64,000 nucleotides of DNA from Salpingoeca rosetta. Taxonomy: Eukaryota; Protista; Choanoflagellata. Shown here piece after piece: positions 2,022 through 14,483 of the stretch. The position numbers and the translations under genes are program-made. Under the pieces are notes generated by a model. The model saw only the letters and a program-made list of their open reading frames with translations, was not told the DNA's origin and made no database searches. How positions within the stretch are numbered: position 1 is the first letter of the stretch; the number at the start of each line of letters is the position of its first letter. The stretch lies in NCBI GenBank assembly GCA_033442325.1, contig JAWQFM010000005.1, positions 1,861,665-1,925,664 on the forward strand, written 5' to 3'.

Positions 2022-5000
2022 TCAGCAGGCACTGGTGGTGCTCATCGAGCGCTGTCGCTTCCCAACATCCACTTGCTCATACTCTGAAGCCGGCAACACA
2101 GGGAGATCTTTCATGTCGTAGTCGCCTGCATCCCAGTCGTGTGCATGCATTCTTCCACCATCGCTTTCTTGGTGTCCAACATCGTACACGGTTGCGTTCC
2201 ATTGGTGAAGTCCTGCAACAAGCAAAGTGCACCGAATGGGAAACCACAGTCAAGGAGCGTGGGGTAAATGGGTGAGTGCACGAACACGCGAACAACACAG
2301 ACAACACACATGTGGCATCACTCTTCATCAAGCACGTGGTGCGAAAAGTACACAAGCGCACGTACACAAGCGCGCGCGCACAGACAGACAGCCAGACAGA
2401 CAGACAGACAGACAGACAGACTCACTCACTCACATACATGCACGTACGGTGAACCTCACCCCGCACGTCGCTCCCGTCACTCGTGGTTGAGTGCCGTCTG
2501 CCCGGTCGCCGCCCTCCAAGGCCAACACGCGTCTCGCGCATGTTCACATTGGGATAGACCGCCTCAACCACGTCGTAATCGCCCTCGCCAGAAGACCGCA
2601 CGGTCACTGGCATGGGATTCTCTGCGTATGCTTGCGCGCCTTCCTTGCCAACGGCAACACGCCGCTTGCTTCGACAGCGCCGTCGCACAATCACCACAAC
2701 AACAATGATGAGCATGACCACACCACCGACTGCGCCGCCCACGATCACTGCAATCGGCACAGCCGTTGGGGAGCCGGATGAATCTGTCTTGATGGTGATC
2801 GTTCGCGTTGTTGTTGTGGATGACGTTGGCAGCAGTCGCTTCGTTGATTGCCCTCTTGCTGTTGCTGCTGCAGTAGGACAAGTGATGTACGTGCGTGGAG
2901 ATGTGAGCCAATATGAGCTAGGTGTGAGACACGCGAGGTCTGAGTGCACAAACAAACAAGGCACAGAACTTGCAAGCGGTTAACACACACACACAATCAC
3001 ATACACAAGAACACACAATCACATGCACACATCCTCCCTCCCTCCTCCTTGTTATCTCACATCACGATAAACCCACCGCAGTCGATGCCTGGTGGACAGT
3101 CACAGTATGGTCCTGTGGCCGTTGGGATGCACGTTCCTTCGGGAAAGCAGATGGTGGAGACGTTACAGGGGTTCAGCATGCACTGACGATCACTGGTTGG
3201 CGTCAGCTCCACAGACTCAAACTCCGTGTCATCGCATACCGTCGCCAGCTCACACACGCGGTTGGTGGTTGGTGTCGGGGGGACAATCGCATACTCGTCA
3301 AGGTTGCACGTGTGCAAGTCAGTGCATTCGCGATTGCTGGTTGGTGTTGGCGCAACGGTCTCGTATTGGCTCGCCGTGCACACGAGCGTTGTCACGCACG
3401 CACGGTCACTGGTGTTGGTCGGCGCCTGGGTTTCAAACTGCAGCGGGAACACGCACGCGTCGCTGATGTTGGCACACACGCGGTTGCTGCTGAGCGTGGC
3501 GTCTGTCACAATGTACTGCGTGCTCAGGTCACACACCGTTGTGTTGGTGCACACGCGATCGCTCGTGTTCGTTGGTGCCGTGGCCTCAAACTGCGTGCTC
3601 GCGCACGGGGCCGAGATGTTGCTGCACCGCCGGTCTGACACGAGCGTCGGCAGCACAGAGATGTACTCCAGCCCCGGTGTGCACACCGTCGTGTTGGCGC
3701 ACATCCGATCAGAGAACTGCGTTGGGGCGCGCGTCTCGTACGAGTCGCAAAGGACGCACGTCGTGAGCGCGCGGCACACCGGGTTGTCCGTTGTCGTCGC
3801 GTTCACAGCCACATACTCGCCCGCCTCGTCATCGCACATCAGCTGCTCGCGGCAGTTGCGGCTCACCGTTGTCGTCGACACCCACACCCTCGGCCCGTAG
3901 TCGTTCAGCACGAGCTCAAACCCTTGGCCGAGGAACGTGAACGCCACCCGCTGCTCGCCGGCAATGCTCACGGGCGCATCGCTGTACGTGAGGGCGGCGG
4001 TTGCGCGGTCGGCGTTGGTTTCGCCAGCGGCATCAATGCTGATGAGCAGCGGCACACCCGTGAGCACGAGGTCGGGTGGCAGTTCAGACGACGCAGCGAC
4101 GAAGAACGCATCGCGTGGTGGGTCGTGGGCCGCCTTGATGAACACGCCACGCTGGTTTGTGGCCGCGTCAGCAACAACCACCTCGCCATCCGTCACCACC
4201 AGCTGCGCGTTGTTGTGCAGCGTAACGTTGGGGCTGTCCAGGTACACAAACACGGCCGTGCGCTGCGGGTCAGAGGGCACCTGCTCCCTGCCGTCGCCAC
4301 CGCTGATCGTCTGCACGTACACGGCGACAGAACACTCTGTCTGCTCGACGCTGACGGCGAGGGACGGGTCCGTGTCTGGCGCTGTCATGTTCACGCTCCG
4401 CACGAGGGCAAACAGACCAAAGTTGGCGCGCAAGAGGAAGTTGACGTCGACGGTGTTGATGATCGTGTTGCCGTCGGCATCCATGTCCGGCATTTGAAAC
4501 GCCTGAACCGCGGACACAAACGCGCCATCTGGATCAAGCAGCCGCTCATTCAGGAACCGTTTCAGAAAAGTCACGTCACGCACGTCAAACAAGCAGTTGC
4601 CATCCGCATCACCAATCTGCCGCTGGTCCGCGCACACTGCGCAAGGCGGCGAGCCACACTCCGCGCGACGTGCACGGCTGGCTGTGGTGCTGCTGAACCC
4701 GAATGTGCGAACACCAGTAGTGCGGGTGGCGCTGGCGCTTTGATGACTACGACGACGCCGCGCAGGTGCGGTGATCTCGAGTGTGACGTCGCCTGCAACA
4801 AATGGGACATCGCTCGCCAACAGCGTGCCGTCCCCATCGGCAATCGTCACCGCTGTGCCGCTGACGGACGAGAATCCAGCACCTGCACCACCCTTGACCC
4901 GCAGCGTCACCTCAAACAGGGTCAGGGTGCCTGGCCCAACACCAGCCGTTGATCCACCAAACGAGATGCGACCGCTGCCGTCCAATCCGCCTGCAAACTC

Positions 5001-8000
5001 GCCGCCAGGCCAGTCGCTCCCTTCTGCCACATCCACAAACTCAAGCACAGCGTCATCAAAGGTGACCTGCAGGGAGATGGAGGCAAACGCCAGGGTGCTC
5101 GGCAGTCGCACGCGCACAGAGATCGCAACGGTGTCGCCGCCTGTCACGGGTGCGAGCGGCAGCTGCTGCGTGGCGCCCAAGTCCACATCGTAGTTTGTGG
5201 GCACCAAATTCACATAGAAGAGTGCCGTGGCGTTCACGTCAGCATTGTCTCCCGCATACACCGCCAGCGTCTCTTGTGTGCGCGAGTTGCCTGTCAGCGT
5301 CGCTGTTCCCGTTGCGCTGTCGATGACAACGGCATCTGTCGCCGTGGGCGTGGTGATATCGAACGTGATGAGGTTGGGCAGGGCGAGCGCGCCGCCATTT
5401 GGGAAGAGGTAAGTGGTCGTGAGCGTGAGCCCGTTCTCCATCACCACGCTCGCTCGCATCTGCTGCTTGGTGTTGACGGTTCCAGCGAGCGTTGTTGCCG
5501 GCAGCACAGGTGTGATGCTGGCCACACCCCAGGCGAGCGAGGAGACGGTGACGGCGGTGGTGTTGAAGAGGTCACGCAGCGTCGCCACACCACGGCCATC
5601 CCTTCGTCACCGGGCAGCTGCGGCGTTGGTGAGACGAGGCGCGTATTGCTGTTGTAGTTGAAGAATGCGGGCGTGGAAACCATCAGCTCTGCGTGGTCGT
5701 TCGCCGACACAACTTCCCTGGACGACAACACCGCACTGACATCGACCATCGCCTGCTGCCACGTGTTGGATGCGCCCAATCGCCGCATCTCCGCCACTTC
5801 TTCGTCCTCGGATCCAGGAAAGGCCGGGAAGGGCCGGAGCGCAACCCGCAGTCCAGTGGCGACCACAACCTCGACAGCCAATGACGCCGTCACGCCCGTG
5901 TGCTCAAACGACACCAGCAGCCGCGCCTGCCCTTCCGTGCTGCCATCCGCAACAGCCACACGCAAGCGCGTGCCATCGACCGTTGCGGTGATGTTTCCCT
6001 CTGTCGCGATGTTCGTGCGCGCGTCTGTTGTAAAGTCAATCTCCGTGCCATCGTCATACTGCAGGAAGACCGAAACCAGGGTTGATGACGCCAGGTTCGC
6101 CGGCAGCTGCGAGCTCACGTCTGTGGACGGCGCCATTGCTGCTGGAAGCCCTGCAACGCGCACACCGGTCACAGCGGGAAGGGCGTTCACCACGTCCACG
6201 GTACCGTGCACAGTCGTGGTGTCAGACACGTACCATGTGAGGCCCACGGCAACAGATCCACCGCCAAGCGTCGTCACGAAGGGGTAGCTGTTGCTGCTCG
6301 CATCGTTAATGTTGGAGGCAATGAGCGCTGGGCTGCCGGTGGTGACGGTGGTGTTGTGCAGTGCGGGGTCGAGGACTCGGGTGCTGCCGTCGCTGAAGAT
6401 GGCGTGGACGACGACGGATGCGCTCTGCTGGTCTGCTGTCAGCACAGACGTGAAGGATGATGACACGCGGGTGTAGGTATCGGCACTTGATGTGGTGGTC
6501 GCAGCAGTGACAGATGCAACGACGGTGGCGGAAATGGCCACGGGTGTTGCTGGTTCGTTGTCTGTCGCTTCAACGTCTCGCGCACCGAGACACGAAGGTG
6601 TGCGCAGCGGATGCGAAATGCACAGCCTGAACGTGCCAGATGTGTTGGTTGTGATGGACAAAGGTGTGACAATCACATTCCCATCATCACTGCCACCGCC
6701 CACGTGTTGCCCCCGCAGCAACGGCCACACCTCTTCGGTCACATCCGTGCTGTTCAACCAATCATCAGCGCCACCACTTGTCATTGTTGTTGGGGATGAC
6801 CAGTCTGCCTCAATCGTGTATCCGACATGCTGGTACAACGCCGTGCCACCAATACGCCGCAGCACCACGTCACTGCCGCTGCTGCTGCCCTGTACGTCGA
6901 TAGCAATGCGAAACGCTGCTGGGTGCCACACCTTGTATCCGAGCGTCGTGTTGAGAGGCAGCGTGGCGTGCTGGACCACCACCTGTGCACTGTCGCTGCC
7001 GGCTGTCTCAGCACCAGTGAAGTGCACATACCCGCAGCTGGCATCAACTTGCAGCGCCTCTGGTGCACTTGAGGAGCACACGAGCGACGTCGACGGTGAT
7101 AGTGTGGTGCCACTGCCGCTGGCGCTGTACGCGCTGACAGTCAACGGGTGCTGCAGTGCTGCGTTGTCTGGGTTGAGGGCGGCCGTGTTGAGCAGGACGT
7201 TGGAGAGCGGGGCGGTTGTGGGCGGTGCACCAGCCGTGCGCATCGATGGGAACGCGTGGAGTGCAACGACGTCGGCTTCATTATAGGTCGTCAGCGAGAC
7301 AGTGGAGGTGCGGTGTGCAGTTGGGTTGGGGTTGCTGCTGGCGACAACCAGCGGCGCCGTGCCCGAGAGGACTGGCTGTCCGCTCGAATCAAACGCCTCC
7401 ACAACACTAACGTTCAACACGACGTCACGCGCAGCCATTGCACCGACCAGCACATCTGCCGTGAACAGCGCACTCTCCTCAGCACCAGCACTACCACCAC
7501 CACCACCCTGCTCGATGGCGCGAACGCCAAGCACAGCAACATCACGCGAGGGCAGCGACGATGCAGTCACCGTCCATCCACTGCCGCCCGTGACGGACTG
7601 GACCTGCAGAGTGTTGGCGTCTAGGGACGTGACACGCAGCTGCCACGAGCTGAGTGGTCGTGCACCGCCATGCGCAGAGACGGTGAGCGTGAAGGTCTTG
7701 GATCGTGGCAGTGGTCGCTGTGGGAACACGGCCAACACATCGCCAGTGAGGGGTTCGGGTCGCTCCACGCGCTGCGCTGTCTGCAACGTGGCTGCTACGT
7801 CTGCTGTTTCTTCTGCTGCTGCTGTCGCGTTTGGACCGGCGGTCAGCGTGATCTCGTGCCACGGCCGTGAAGTAGGAGGAAGGCAGCGTCAGTGTTGCTG
7901 TGCACGACGGCGTGGGTGACGATGAGGACGTGGTGCACATGGCTGTGACGGCCGTGAGCTGCTGTGCGTTGTCCTCAATGCGCACGTGGCACTCTGCATC

Positions 8001-10292
8001 TTGCATGGCGAGGCCGCGGCCATCTAGTGCAAACAGCAGCACCTTCACCGCCGCGTCATGGGGCAGCACGACTGCGGGCTGCGATGGCTGGCGGCTGTGG
8101 GAAAGGCCGGGCTCGCCCAGCAGCACAGCACGTACGCGCGTGGCTGTTGGTGCAGTTGTTGTGATGGCGGTGCCTGTGATGGAGGCTGTTGCCTGCTTGT
8201 CGCCGAGCGCTGAGTGGATGGACACGGGAGAATCACGCGCAGCGACTGTGAGCAGCGAGCGCGACGTGACTGTCGTGTTATCGCTGACGGAGGTTGTGTC
8301 TGAGGGTGAAGCTGCAACGAGGAGACCGGGTGGTGCTGCAGCTGCCATTCTGATGGGCAGGGTGATGGCTGGGTCGACGCACAGGGTGTCTGCGGTGCTG
8401 GTGCCGGCTGCGGCCACAACCCAGCCATCAGGGCACGTCGAGTGTGGCTGGCATGCGTCCTGGTTGATGGTGTCTGTGAACGTGTCGGGAGGGCACGCGT
8501 TGCACGTCACGTCTGTGTCGTTGTAGAAGGTGCCCGGCTCACAGGGCGGCAGCACCGTGATCTGGCGCGACGCCGAGATGGCCGGCACCCGCTCCACATA
8601 CAGCCGAACAGTCACAGTGCCCGTGGGCGCTCGTCTGTTCAGCTGCCAACGTGCGTTATTGCCGAGCCGGGTGGCAGCAAGAACATGAGGGTATTGGTGT
8701 TGGGTGCAGTGTGATTGGAGTGAGGGTGTAGACAAGGGCTAGAAGGGCTTCCTGCAAACAAGGAAATCATATGGGCACCCTTGTGGGTGTTGTAGCCAAA
8801 CTATCACAATCAAAGCAACTTCATTGGCTCAACGTGGGACGTTGTGACGTGACAACTTACCAAGATTCCAACGGCGGCAGAGTAAGGTGTTGACGCTGGT
8901 GATTCGTCGAACGTGAATCCATTTTGCACAGCTCCAATGATGTGTTCACCCGACATCGCATTGCTGACAGCGACGGCAACCTCCTCATCGGCAAAGTTGA
9001 CGATGGTATAGGCCACGGTAATGTTGGTTCCTTGAACTGCACGACCAGTGGTGCCGACCGATCCTGCAAAACTATATCCGACGGCTGCAGGCGCAATAGC
9101 AAGCAGCGTCAGGCGATGATTATAACAAGAGGAGTTTAACTACACTTGCATGGAGGCAGCTGCCAGTGATAGCATCAAGTCATGCGTGAAGCTTCGTGAT
9201 CCACACACCTGGAACGAAGAGGGGTCCGAGGAAGAAGTCGTCCGTTCCGCCGTCGACTTCTTTCACATAGATGTTGTGCGTGTACAGAAGTGGTTGAGGA
9301 TAGTTGTTGGCGATTGAAGGGACCGTGTATGTAGCAGATCCAGAATTTGGCGTGCTTTCATCCCCAAATAATGAGTAGGGGTACGCAAGATCGCCCTCGG
9401 ACGTGCGAAACACCAATTGAATCTTCACATCATTCCCATCAAAGTTCTGTCAAGGCATCAGAATACACGTGTTCAAGGTTTGAGGAGAGAGTGCTTTCGT
9501 CAGTGGTGGGTGAGAGGAGACAAATGCCAGGCATGAAACGAGAGAGAGAGAGAGATAGCGCGCTAGGCGAGCCGCACTGGTGACATGTAACAGCGTGAAG
9601 ATACCACCGGGTGCATACCTGCCATTTGATAGTTACATCTTCGCCAGGGATCAAGAACGAGTACGCACGCGGACTTGTAACGGCGAATGGTGGAACTGCC
9701 AGCAGCAGAGAGTTGGAAGACCGGGACGAGGATGGTGAGAGGCAAGTCAAATGCTGTGCGGACGTGCGTGCACGTTACTGAAAGATGCAACACGTGACCT
9801 TTACTCTGCCACGCACGCACACACACGCACACACACACACATTCACACACGTCTTTGACGTCGATCCGACTCACATTCAGTGGAGAAGGTGTCGCCGCTG
9901 ACAAAGGAGCTGGCCCTGGTGTTGTCTGGTGCAATCTGCAGCAGGATTTGCAAGTTGTCCTCTGCGATGTACGGGATATCCCAGTTGTAAGAGCCAGTGG
10001 TGGCTGGGCTGGCGAGGGTATGGTTGAGAACAACCTCGCCCGAGAGGAACCGTTGCACTGTACCGCCGTCTTGGTCCAAGCTCCCCAGGACAATGAAGAT
10101 GTTTGGGAGGCCTGCTTCGACGTTCCACTCGATGGTGAGCGTCGATTCACCACCAATGAGCGTGCCGCTCGCGTCATAGGTCACGCACGGTGCGGGCGTG
10201 CATGGTGCAGCCGCAAAGCACGTCCGTGGCAGCGCACCACCGGACAGGAGCGCCAAAACGGCAAGAAGGACAGCAAGGACAGAGGTGGCCAT
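2022..10292 (-). CDS. TMEM132-like type I membrane protein: signal peptide, Ig-like modules, TNFR-like repeat, TMEM132 cohesin/Ig region, second cohesin, dockerin, Cys-rich (PTxTSDRxC) repeats, EGF, TM, Tyr-motif tail; multi-exon, two apparent frameshifts
   Basis: Signal peptide MATSVLAVLLAVLALL at 10292. TMEM132-like stretch VLLNTAALN...VCSSS...LQVDASCGYVHFTGAETAG...KVWHP. Cohesin-like TVAISVRV...SLQVTFDDAVLEFV...LFEVTLRVK. Dockerin-like GDADGNCLFDVRDVTFLKRFL and DADGNTIINTVDVNFLLR. TM IAVIVGGAVGGVVMLIIVVVVIV. Last exon ends SAC* at 2022. Confidence 0.8.
2113..2766 (-). repeat. Copy A of a ~660-bp inverted duplication (TM, tail and intron) shared with 13746-14413
   Basis: The reverse complement aligns almost base for base with 13746-14413, including the intron. 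Confidence 0.95.
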
Positions 10293-13700: not shown

Positions 13701-14483
13701 GTGGATGGCCCCAACGGCGACCGCTCCGCGTCGACCAACTCGACGACGGCTGTGCCCATTGCAGTGATCGTGGGCGGCGCAGTCGGTGGTGTGGTCATGC
13801 TCATCATTGTTGTTGTGGTGATTGTGCGGTGGCGGTGTCGAAGCAAGCGGCGTGTTGCCGTTGTCAAAGAAGGCCCGCAAGCATATGCAGAGAATCCCAT
13901 ACCAGTGACCGTGCGGTCTTCTGGCGAGGGCGATTACGACGTGGTTGAGGCGGTCTATCCCAATGTGAACATGCGCGAGACGCATGTTGGGCTTGGAGGG
14001 CGGCGACCGGGCAGACGGCACTCAACGATGAGTGACGGGAGCGACGTGCGGGGTGAGGTTCACCATATGTGCATGTATGTGAGTGAGTCTGTCTGTCTGT
14101 CTATCTGGCTGTGTGTGTGTCTGTCTGTCTGTCTGTGTGCATGTGTGTGTCTGTGCTTATGTACGTGCGCTTGTGCACTTGTCGCACCACGTGCTTGACG
14201 AAGAGTGATGCCACATGTGTGTTGTCTGTGTTGATCGCGTGTTCGTGCACTCACCCATTTACCCCACGCTCCTTGACTGTGGTTTCCCATTCGGTGCACT
14301 TTGCTTGTTGCAGGACTTCACCAATGGAACGCAACCGTGTACGATGTTGGACACCAAGAAAGCGATGGTGGAAGAATGCATGCACACGACTGGGATGCAG
14401 GCGACTACGACATCAAGAATTCATCACCACCTTACGAGACAGTTGGAAAGCGACAGCAATCGACTCCTGCCAGCGCATGCTGA
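10702..14483 (+). CDS. Cadherin: signal peptide, ~5-6 EC repeats, EGF, Thr-rich stalks, 3 extended EGF repeats, TM, Tyr-motif tail; spans gap 12649-12748
   Basis: Cadherin motifs ATDPD, DVNDNSPVF, LDYE, DVNDNVPVF, ATDDD, VDFE and DRDDLPVF; EGF CVNDGVC and CQNGGTC; poly-Thr; TM ~13755-13825; last exon ends SAC* at 14483. Confidence 0.9.
13746..14413 (+). repeat. Copy B of the inverted duplication shared with 2113-2766
   Basis: Direct sequence comparison. Confidence 0.95.

What the first reader, a model, noticed from the sequence alone, without database searches (positions are those of the whole stretch)
4415..5160. Cohesin - polybasic cleavage site - dockerin in one eukaryotic receptor
Seen: a cohesin-like domain (~4775-5160) is followed by PARRRRSH...SRARRAE and then a dockerin-like duplicated Ca-loop/helix (GDADGNCLFDVRDVTFLKRFL; DADGNTIINTVDVNFLLR). 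Established: cohesin-dockerin is the Ca-dependent binding pair of bacterial cellulosomes; TMEM132 proteins and choanoflagellate coherin cadherins carry cohesin domains. Inference: after furin-type cleavage the shed ectodomain could stay clipped to the membrane stub via cohesin-dockerin, or bind in trans between cells. That would be a cellulosome-like, Ca- or force-releasable adhesion latch.
Basis: partly seen in the sequence, partly recalled or inferred. Interest (0 to 1): 0.75.

Follow-up and report, generated by a model that had tools for sequence, protein, structure and literature searches.

The report
Cleavable cohesin–dockerin joint in receptors
A choanoflagellate surface receptor carries a bacterial-type cohesin and dockerin pair separated by two conserved protease sites. 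The same unit recurs in many large eukaryotic adhesion proteins and looks like a built-in "cut, then hold together" joint.

Summary
Window 4416-5228 (minus strand, Salpingoeca rosetta gene PTSG_01972) encodes three things in order:
- a Pfam-significant cohesin with a cohesin fold;
- an RRRR site, a 24-residue disordered spacer and a RARR site;
- a disulfide-stapled type I dockerin. It is weak by itself (14 bits) but secure by paralogue profile and by fold.

This is not a one-off. At least 20 copies of this cassette exist in the genome. Cohesin and dockerin are always adjacent, one to one, and no orphan of either was found.

Among 173 cassettes from 126 database proteins, 165 keep furin-type or dibasic sites between the two domains. 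The named sources are three choanoflagellates and one haptophyte. Partner domains include cadherin, tyrosine phosphatase, VWA, Kunitz and TNFR/EGF.

Direct-coupling analysis puts a cohesin-dockerin residue pair (Gly in strand 6 with Phe after helix 3) as the strongest coupling in the whole cassette. Other top pairs link cohesin strands 3 and 8 to dockerin helix 1.

Best reading: a convertase excises the spacer, and the two halves stay joined through a calcium-dependent cohesin-dockerin contact. Cleavage, binding and release are inferred, not shown. The complex prediction gave no verdict. The findings search listed only this same stretch, not other DNA.

The parts
2025..10292 (-). Gene PTSG_01972 (annotated 2268 aa), a type I single-pass receptor. 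Signal peptide at the N-terminus (10212-10292).
   Evidence: names the protein (P0002). maps it by tblastn and shows the N-terminal hydrophobic leader.
8379..8495 (-). TNFR/ephrin-receptor-like cysteine-rich repeat
   Evidence: Pfam TNFR_c6, E 1.7e-8, in ORF 7542-8735
6917..7201 (-). TMEM132-type Ig domain (fourth domain). A weak sixth-domain match lies at about 6320-6481.
   Evidence: Pfam Ig_TMEM132_4th, E 5.7e-20; Ig_TMEM132_6th, E 0.02
4761..5228 (-). Cohesin domain (Pfam core 4785-5138), a nine-strand beta sandwich
4749..4760 (-). Basic site 1, RRRR, directly after the last cohesin strand
   Evidence: Present in 15 of 16 paralogues. R majority in family columns 160-163.
4677..4748 (-). 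Spacer of 24 residues, Ser/Thr/Ala-rich, predicted disordered and not alignable among paralogues
   Evidence: pLDDT below 50 for cassette residues 159-187. Spacer length 0-41 in paralogues and 0-77 in the family.
4665..4676 (-). Basic site 2, RARR (R-x-R-R)
   Evidence: Invariant columns R185, R187 and R188 in 16 of 16 paralogues. 117 of 173 strict and 138 of 173 dibasic in the family.
4614..4664 (-). Cysteine-bearing N-terminal extension of the dockerin (C..PPC..C)
   Evidence: Conserved Cys columns 197 and 200, paired with the Cys in Ca loop 1 (column 213). The coupling of columns 200 and 213 ranks second overall.
4416..4613 (-). Type I dockerin: Ca loop 1 plus helix 1 (4551-4613), a short connecting helix, and Ca loop 2 plus helix 3 (4428-4481), ending in the NF motif
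   Evidence: Loop positions 1, 3, 5 and 12 are conserved in 87-100% of 173 cassettes.
3864..4415 (-). Conserved domain of about 180 residues after the dockerin, function unknown, shared by most paralogous cassettes
   Evidence: Iterated search of the flanks
3087..3863 (-). TNFR-like cysteine-rich repeats and one EGF-like domain
   Evidence: Weak Pfam TNFR_c6 and hEGF matches; the repeat pattern can be read in the translation
2686..2754 (-). Transmembrane helix, followed by a cytoplasmic tail of about 138 residues
   Evidence: The intron at about 2868-3076 is supported by RNA loose ends.

Best explanation
The stretch encodes one copy of a conserved eukaryotic cassette: cohesin, basic site 1, variable spacer, basic site 2, then a disulfide-stapled dockerin. 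It sits in the ectodomain of a type I receptor, downstream of a TMEM132-like domain array.

Shown here:
- both domains are true members of the bacterial cohesin and type I dockerin families;
- the two basic sites are the most conserved feature of an otherwise unalignable, disordered linker;
- cohesin and dockerin always occur one to one and adjacent;
- residues on cohesin strands 3, 6 and 8 co-vary with dockerin loop 1/helix 1 and with the Phe after helix 3.

Inferred:
- in the secretory pathway a furin/kexin-type convertase cuts at both sites and removes the spacer, much as the C-peptide is removed from proinsulin;
- the N-terminal ectodomain (about 1500 residues, ending in the cohesin) stays attached to the membrane-bound part (beginning with the dockerin) through a calcium-dependent cohesin-dockerin contact on the canonical 8-3-6-5 face;
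- the receptor thus becomes a non-covalent two-piece molecule whose outer part can be released or exchanged.

In giant proteins with several cassettes, the same process would give a chain of segments held by such joints.
For: Domain identity.

Cassette recurrence:
- All 16 Pfam cohesins in the genome align end to end with the window's 270-residue unit.
- Four apparent orphan dockerins are also full cassettes.

Sites:
- RxRR is invariant in 16 of 16 paralogues and RRRR is present in 15 of 16.
- No such motif occurs in 12,101 flanking residues.
- Of 173 cassettes in 126 representative proteins, 129 have a strict furin motif in the linker, 36 have dibasic motifs only, and 8 have none.
- The presence of the two sites co-varies (columns 162 and 193).
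- The linker is disordered in the model.

Enzyme: four P-domain hits in the genome, one confirmed as subtilase plus P domain.

Contact:
- The strongest coupling in the cassette, by both MI-APC and mean-field DCA, is cohesin column 89 with dockerin column 271.
- That pair is Gly-Phe in 102 cassettes, non-Gly/non-Phe in 61, and mixed in 10 (Fisher 1e-35, not corrected for phylogeny).
- The next inter-domain pairs are columns 47-210, 47-218, 128-218 and 48-217.
- The predicted disulfide (columns 200-213) ranks second overall, which serves as an internal control.
- The single-chain model has pTM 0.77 despite a 29-residue disordered linker.
Against: - There is no experimental evidence of cleavage, calcium binding or cohesin-dockerin binding.
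- The complex test gave no verdict, because one unrelated control scored 0.41 against 0.56.
- The window's own dockerin is below Pfam's threshold.
- Covariation can be inflated by subfamily structure. It cannot tell contact within one molecule from contact between two copies of the same protein.
- 8 of 173 cassettes lack any basic site, so the joint can exist uncut.
- Strand numbers come from the order of strands in a predicted model, not from a solved structure.
- In the one RNA run examined, most reads came from the 97.5%-identical paralogue PTSG_07261 rather than from the window copy.
Confidence: 0.55

Rival explanations
1. The cassette is cut as above, but the freed cohesin and dockerin bind in trans. 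They would bind copies on the same or neighbouring cells, or the cassettes of other receptors. This would give cell-cell adhesion or a combinatorial surface scaffold rather than an internal joint.
For: - At least 20 cassettes with 25-39% identity give room for a specificity code.
- The dockerin recognition positions (10, 11, 17 and 18 of each repeat) are variable.
- Covariation fits homotypic trans binding as well as cis binding.
- Cassettes sit in adhesion-type proteins such as cadherins.
Against: - Strict one-to-one adjacency with no orphan cohesin or dockerin is the opposite of the scaffoldin/enzyme pattern.
- A tethered partner at very high local concentration would normally win before cleavage.
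- The single-chain model packs the two domains together (pTM 0.77).
Confidence: 0.15
2. The sites are cut, but cohesin and dockerin do not hold each other. Cleavage simply sheds the outer ectodomain, and the dockerin is only a calcium-stabilised structural cap on the stub.
For: - The basic sites are conserved.
- The complex prediction was not specific.
- The window dockerin is a weak family member.
Against: - It does not explain why a cohesin always precedes and a dockerin always follows the cut site.
- It does not explain why the strongest couplings in the cassette are between the two domains and involve known recognition positions.
Confidence: 0.12
3. The basic runs are not protease sites. 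The cassette stays in one piece, the cohesin and dockerin pack as a rigid two-domain unit, and the arginines serve another role such as binding sulfated glycans.
For: - 8 of 173 cassettes have no basic site and 36 have only dibasic motifs.
- Cleavage has not been observed.
Against: - Two separate R-x-[KR]-R sites bracket a spacer that is hypervariable in length and sequence. That pattern is typical of excised propeptides.
- The motif is absent from 12,101 flanking residues.
- The sites lie in a disordered, exposed loop.
- Convertases are encoded in the genome.
Confidence: 0.12

Closest known systems
Bacterial type I cohesin-dockerin pairs of cellulosomes (for example C. thermocellum, PDB 1OHZ and 2CCL)
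   Same: Same two families by profile and by fold. The duplicated Ca loop/helix carries D/N at loop positions 1, 3, 5 and 12. Covarying residues lie on the strands numbered 3, 6 and 8 and on dockerin positions 10 and 11, which is the canonical contact region by established knowledge.
   Different: Here the two are adjacent in one eukaryotic membrane protein, one to one, with protease sites between them. The dockerin carries conserved cysteines (a likely disulfide). No enzymes or multi-cohesin scaffoldins are involved.
Non-cellulosomal proteins with cohesin and dockerin in one polypeptide (survey by Peer et al. 2009, cited in PMC6030884, recalled from memory and not held here; bacterial ESM Atlas clusters)
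   Same: Both modules occur in the same protein. Small bacterial proteins of 184-218 residues carrying Cohesin plus Dockerin_1 exist.
   Different: The prokaryotic proteins have no convertase sites and no TMEM132-like array, and they are not parts of giant receptors.
Furin-cut, non-covalently held receptors of animals: Notch S1/heterodimerisation domain and LAR-type receptor tyrosine phosphatases (established knowledge)
   Same: The proposed logic is the same: a convertase cut in the ectodomain, the halves stay associated, and the outer half can later be released. One cassette-bearing homologue is itself a receptor tyrosine phosphatase (P0005).
   Different: The holding domains are unrelated. 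Here a dedicated binding pair of bacterial type does the holding, and two cuts remove a spacer.
GAIN/GPS and SEA autoproteolytic modules of adhesion GPCRs and mucins (established knowledge)
   Same: A portable ectodomain module that turns one chain into two non-covalently attached pieces, proposed to respond to mechanical force.
   Different: Those modules cut themselves within one fold. Here an external protease would be needed, and two separate domains bind each other.
TMEM132 proteins and the coherin, lefftyrin and hedgling cadherins (PMC6030884)
   Same: The TMEM132 third to sixth domains lie upstream of the cassette in this gene and in its homologues.
   Different: That paper describes a divergent cohesin-like domain ahead of the Ig domains. 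It reports no dockerin in vertebrates and no cleavage sites. The cassette here is a second, canonical cohesin about 350 residues after the sixth domain. This gene has no cadherin repeats.
Proinsulin-type propeptide excision (established knowledge)
   Same: Two basic sites bracket a poorly conserved connecting peptide whose removal leaves two associated chains.
   Different: Insulin chains are held by disulfides, not by a binding-domain pair.

Membership tests
Cohesin (PF00963) | Profile match above the curated threshold | tested here: met
   40.2 bits against 24.1, E 4.8e-10. The paralogue profile finds only cohesins in the PDB, best E 3.5e-8.
Cohesin (PF00963) | Nine-strand jelly-roll beta sandwich like solved cohesins | tested here: met
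   Model pLDDT mostly 75-94 over the domain. Top 40 or more Foldseek hits are cohesins with target TM 0.72-0.79.
Cohesin (PF00963) | Binds a dockerin | tested here: inconclusive
   The complex prediction gave no verdict. Covariation supports a contact. A binding assay is not possible with these tools.
Dockerin type I (PF00404) | Profile match above the curated threshold | tested here: not met
   The window's own segment scores 14.2 bits against 22.9. Four genomic dockerin matches reach the cut-off, two of them in cassettes aligned here and one in a cassette found. 13 of 16 paralogues match at E up to 1, best 3.4e-8. Membership therefore rests on the paralogue profile: PDB hits are all dockerins, best E 9e-7.
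Dockerin type I (PF00404) | Duplicated segment of about 22 residues, each a 12-residue Ca loop with D/N at positions 1, 3, 5, 9 and 12, followed by a helix | tested here: met
   Read directly: DADGNCLFDVRD and DADGNTIINTVD. Family-wide conservation is 87-100% at loop positions 1, 3, 5 and 12.
Dockerin type I (PF00404) | Dockerin fold rather than a paired EF-hand | tested here: met
   pLDDT 88. The top 32 Foldseek hits are dockerins, with target TM 0.65-0.83 in most and rmsd mostly 2-4 A. Calmodulin and polcalcin score TM below 0.25. Foldseek E-values are weak (0.06 or higher) because the domain is short.
Dockerin type I (PF00404) | Calcium binding | not testable with these tools
   Only the ligand residues can be read.
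Proprotein-convertase (furin/kexin) substrates | R-x-[K/R]-R motif in an exposed segment of a secretory-pathway protein | tested here: met
   RRRR and RARR in a linker with pLDDT below 50. The protein has a signal peptide and a transmembrane helix.
Proprotein-convertase (furin/kexin) substrates | Motif conserved while the surroundings vary | tested here: met
Proprotein-convertase (furin/kexin) substrates | A convertase is present in the organism | tested here: met
   Four P-domain matches; one ORF carries Peptidase_S8 plus P_proprotein.
Proprotein-convertase (furin/kexin) substrates | Actual cleavage | not testable with these tools
   This needs protein data.
TMEM132 family | The five-domain array followed directly by the transmembrane helix | tested here: not met
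   The fourth domain is significant and the sixth is weak. However, about 1300 further residues (the cassette, cysteine-rich repeats and EGF) follow before the membrane. The gene contains a TMEM132-like array but is not a TMEM132 orthologue.
Coherin cadherins | Cadherin repeats together with a cohesin | tested here: not met
   No Cadherin match in P0001 or P0002. Other cassette proteins do have cadherin repeats (P0004, P0087).
Cellulosome-type system | Multi-cohesin scaffoldin plus separate dockerin-bearing enzymes | tested here: not met
   Cohesin and dockerin are one to one and adjacent in all 20 cassettes found, and none was seen without its partner.

The most novel reading that the evidence does not exclude
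The cassette is a general eukaryotic cleave-and-hold joint, borrowed from bacteria. It turns giant adhesion proteins (cadherins, receptor phosphatases, TMEM132-like receptors) into chains of segments held by specific, calcium-dependent, very force-resistant cohesin-dockerin bonds.

Different cassettes would have their own pairing code. Ectodomain pieces could then be released under load or low calcium, or exchanged between receptors, giving a cell-surface counterpart of cellulosome assembly. It would be an ancient alternative to the GAIN, SEA and Notch-type joints of animals.
Probability: 0.2. Interest if true: 0.9.

Novelty: new variant of a known kind. Interest (0 to 1): 0.74.

Why it matters
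Cohesin-dockerin is one of the strongest known protein-protein bonds, and it is studied almost only in bacterial cellulose degradation.

If eukaryotes use it as a processed joint inside adhesion and signalling receptors, three things follow:
- It would be a new solution to making a receptor ectodomain detachable or force-sensitive. Animals solve that problem with Notch S1 cleavage, GAIN and SEA domains.
- It would give a concrete role to the cohesin domains of choanoflagellate cadherins and of proteins carrying a TMEM132-like array.
- It would offer a compact natural module (about 280 residues) for protein engineering: it is made as one chain and ends as two held pieces.

The claim is directly testable with simple biochemistry.

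Tried and rejected
- Complex prediction of the cohesin part against the dockerin part with two calcium ions gave no verdict. The score was 0.56, but one unrelated control scored 0.41. It is not used as evidence either way.
- Structure search of the whole-cassette model in the ESM Atlas matched only the cohesin half and says nothing about how the two domains pack.
- Single-sequence search of the cohesin against PDB sequences found nothing. The dockerin alone gave only weak dockerin hits. Profiles were needed.
- The word-based homologue search found only five proteins, because of its length and word limits.
- The papers by Peer et al. 2009 and Nichols et al. 2012 are not held, so what they say about choanoflagellate dockerins could not be checked. 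No held paper links dockerin with furin, or with choanoflagellates beyond PMC6030884.
- A generic EF-hand pair was considered and rejected.
- An Ig fold in place of a cohesin was considered and rejected.
- A pseudogene reading of the window copy, based on two frame breaks, was rejected as unlikely.
- The CLIPPER domain (PDB 9ifr) appeared among the cohesin-like folds. It concerns isopeptide bonds and was not pursued.
Exon pieces and database proteins were used by reference.

Full report
**What is at the coordinates.**
The finding lies on the minus strand in an 843-codon open frame, 3057-5588.
- Pfam places a Cohesin domain at ORF residues 151-268, window 4785-5138, with E 4.8e-10 and 40.2 bits against a cut-off of 24.1.
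- Directly after the last strand come RRRR (4749-4760), a 24-residue Ser/Thr/Ala-rich spacer, and RARR (4665-4676).
- A short cysteine-bearing stretch follows, then two Ca-loop/helix repeats (4551-4613 and 4428-4481).

**Is the second domain a dockerin or a generic EF-hand?**
- Taken alone it is below threshold: Dockerin_1, E 0.05, 14.2 bits against 22.9. It is still the only family hit and spans profile positions 2-52 of 57.
- The only PDB sequences reached at E up to 10 are dockerins.
- The case becomes firm with paralogues. A profile of the 16 equivalent segments of this genome finds 20 PDB chains at E up to 0.01. All are dockerins, the best at 9e-7, and the alignments are full length.
- 13 of the 16 segments hit Dockerin_1, best E 3.4e-8.
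- An AlphaFold2 model of the window's segment has pLDDT 88. Its top 32 Foldseek hits are dockerins, with target TM 0.65-0.83 in most. Calmodulin and polcalcin score TM below 0.25.
- The cohesin model's top 40 or more hits are cohesins, with target TM 0.72-0.79. The cohesin profile finds only cohesins in the PDB.

**The gene.**
- The window is Salpingoeca rosetta. The protein is PTSG_01972 (P0002, 2268 aa). A 97.5%-identical paralogue, PTSG_07261, lies on another contig.
- The protein has a signal peptide and TNFR-like repeats.
- A TMEM132-like array follows. The fourth domain has E 6e-20, and the third, fifth and sixth are seen weakly here or in homologues.
- About 350 residues of unknown kind come next, then the cassette and a conserved domain of about 180 residues.
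- It ends with TNFR-like cysteine-rich repeats, an EGF-like domain, a transmembrane helix (2686-2754) and a short tail.
- It has no cadherin repeats.

**It is a cassette, not a curiosity.**
- Six-frame searches of the whole genome found 16 cohesins and 14 dockerin-like matches. Wherever both were seen, they lay 200-300 bases apart in the same order and the same frame.
- All 16 cohesin loci align end to end with the window's 270-residue unit.
- Four dockerin matches that seemed to lack a cohesin are also complete cassettes.
- That gives at least 20 cassettes, including two nearly identical pairs. None has a cohesin without a dockerin or the reverse.
- Several giant open frames carry two or three cassettes about 5 kb apart.
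- At least 419 residues upstream and about 190 downstream are also conserved between copies.

**The basic sites.**
- In the 16-copy alignment (25-39% identity to the window's copy) there are only 12 invariant columns. Three of them are the arginines of site 2 (R-x-R-R). The four arginines of site 1 are at least 90% conserved.
- Between the sites the spacer is 0-41 residues long and cannot be aligned.
- In the same proteins, 12,101 residues outside the cassettes contain no R-x-[KR]-R motif. The 4,106 residues inside contain 37.
- In the model, the segment between the sites has pLDDT below 50.
- The genome encodes subtilase-plus-P-domain convertases.

**Beyond this genome.**
- A profile search of 1.84 billion representative proteins gave 8367 hits at E up to 0.001 and 310 at up to 1e-30.
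- 129 cassettes have at least one strict furin motif in the linker, 36 have only dibasic motifs at the two places, and 8 have none.
- By aligned column, site 2 is R-x-[KR]-R in 117 and dibasic in 138. Site 1 is R-x-[KR]-R in 82 and dibasic in 116.
- The calcium-ligand positions 1, 3, 5 and 12 of both loops are conserved in 87-100% of cassettes. Three cysteine columns are conserved.
- Named sources are S. rosetta, Codosiga hollandica, Barroeca monosierra and one haptophyte record, Pavlovales sp. CCMP2436. Most others are unnamed environmental assemblies.
- Partner domains include cadherin, Kunitz, VWA, TNFR, EGF and a protein tyrosine phosphatase. The phosphatase record is labelled as a bacterial MAG, but its architecture is that of a eukaryotic receptor.
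- Small bacterial proteins carrying cohesin plus dockerin also exist.

**Do the two domains touch?**
- The dedicated complex test gave no verdict and is not counted.
- Two other lines bear on the question. First, the single-chain model has pTM 0.77 although about a tenth of it is a disordered linker. That suggests a defined mutual arrangement, but it is only a model.
- Second, I ran covariation analysis on the 173 cassettes (effective number 167).
- With both MI-APC and mean-field direct coupling, the strongest pair in the whole cassette is between the domains: cohesin column 89 (window Gly91) and dockerin column 271 (window Phe270).
- The counts are Gly with Phe 102, neither 61, mixed 10. The alternatives compensate in size (Val-Ala, Val-Val, Ala-Leu).
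- The second-ranked coupling is the cysteine pair of columns 200 and 213, a plausible disulfide that acts as an internal control.
- The third-ranked coupling is again inter-domain (columns 47 and 210). Pairs 47-218, 128-218 and 48-217 are also in the top 26.
- By the order of strands in the model, the cohesin columns lie in strands 3, 6 and 8.
- The dockerin columns are positions 3, 10 and 11 of the first repeat and the Phe after helix 3.
- By established knowledge of cellulosomal complexes, dockerins bind the 8-3-6-5 sheet through positions 10, 11, 17 and 18. So the signal falls where a canonical contact would be.
- Caveats: the Fisher value is not corrected for phylogeny, the sample is small for this method, and the signal does not separate contact within one molecule from contact between two copies.

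**Best explanation.**
- The cassette is made as one chain.
- A convertase removes the spacer.
- The cohesin-ended outer fragment stays on the dockerin-headed membrane fragment through a calcium-dependent bond.
- The strict one-to-one adjacency favours this internal joint over a scaffold-and-client system.
- Release by force or low calcium, and exchange between cassettes, are possible but untested.
- I put 0.55 on the full chain of inference. The domain identities alone are near certain.

**State of the window copy.**
- Against the paralogue's single 2028-codon frame, the window has one extra base at 7859 and one missing base at 5588. The annotators bridged both with short introns.
- Contigs from three independent DNA studies insert one base at 5587. 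The inserted letter differs from the paralogue's and restores the frame.
- Contigs from two of those studies omit the extra base at 7859.
- These breaks are therefore probably errors of the reference sequence.
- Stranded RNA reads cover 3100-7400 in the sense expected for a minus-strand gene. They show no introns there and a splice from 3077 to 2867.
- At sites that distinguish the copies, nearly all reads carry the paralogue's letters. In that run the window copy is at best weakly expressed.

**Novelty.**
- Cohesin domains in choanoflagellate cadherins and the TMEM132-like array are published (PMC6030884).
- From memory, the 2009 survey by Peer and colleagues noted cohesin and dockerin modules in lower eukaryotes, sometimes in one protein. 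I could not read it.
- I found no held paper describing the conserved pair of convertase sites, the one-to-one cassette, or the inter-domain covariation.
- I rate it a new variant of known kinds: it combines a bacterial binding pair with the convertase-cut heterodimer principle of animal receptors.

Noticed in passing
window 5588 and 7859: The window copy has two single-base frame breaks relative to the intact paralogue. Independent DNA assemblies insert a base at 5587 (three studies) and omit the extra base at 7859 (two studies). The breaks are probably reference errors, and the two short introns in the annotated model are probably artefacts.
   Followed up: partly
window 2983-8618, and L026 (another contig of the same genome): A recent duplication of at least 5.6 kb at 97.5% identity gives the paralogue PTSG_07261. 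In the one RNA run examined, almost all reads at distinguishing sites come from the paralogue.
   Followed up: partly
window 13722-14480 (+) and 2025-2889 (-): The transmembrane and tail exons of this gene have a diverged second copy (71-89% protein identity) on the opposite strand, at the end of the neighbouring head-to-head gene.
   Followed up: partly
genome contigs C6 about 1.970-1.980 Mb, C7 about 2.027-2.037 Mb, C4 about 1.898-1.905 Mb: Giant open frames (6100-7600 codons) carry two or three cassettes spaced about 5 kb apart. Each sits inside a repeated super-module of at least 900 residues that includes the TMEM132-like array.
   Followed up: partly
P0005 (database protein labelled as a Rhodobacteraceae MAG): This is a receptor with the cassette, several EGF domains and a protein tyrosine phosphatase domain. 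Its architecture is eukaryotic, so the bacterial label is probably contamination of the bin.
   Followed up: no
P0138 (Pavlovales sp. CCMP2436, KAJ1626334.1): A complete cassette with dibasic sites occurs in a haptophyte record. The cassette may therefore not be limited to the relatives of animals.
   Followed up: no
window 3864-4415 and about 5230-6300: Two conserved stretches flank the cassette (about 180 residues after it and about 350 before it). They match no Pfam family but are shared by most paralogues.
   Followed up: no
P0001 (PTSG_07261): UniRef calls it a GPS domain-containing protein, but no GPS match appeared in the Pfam scan at E up to 0.01.
   Followed up: no
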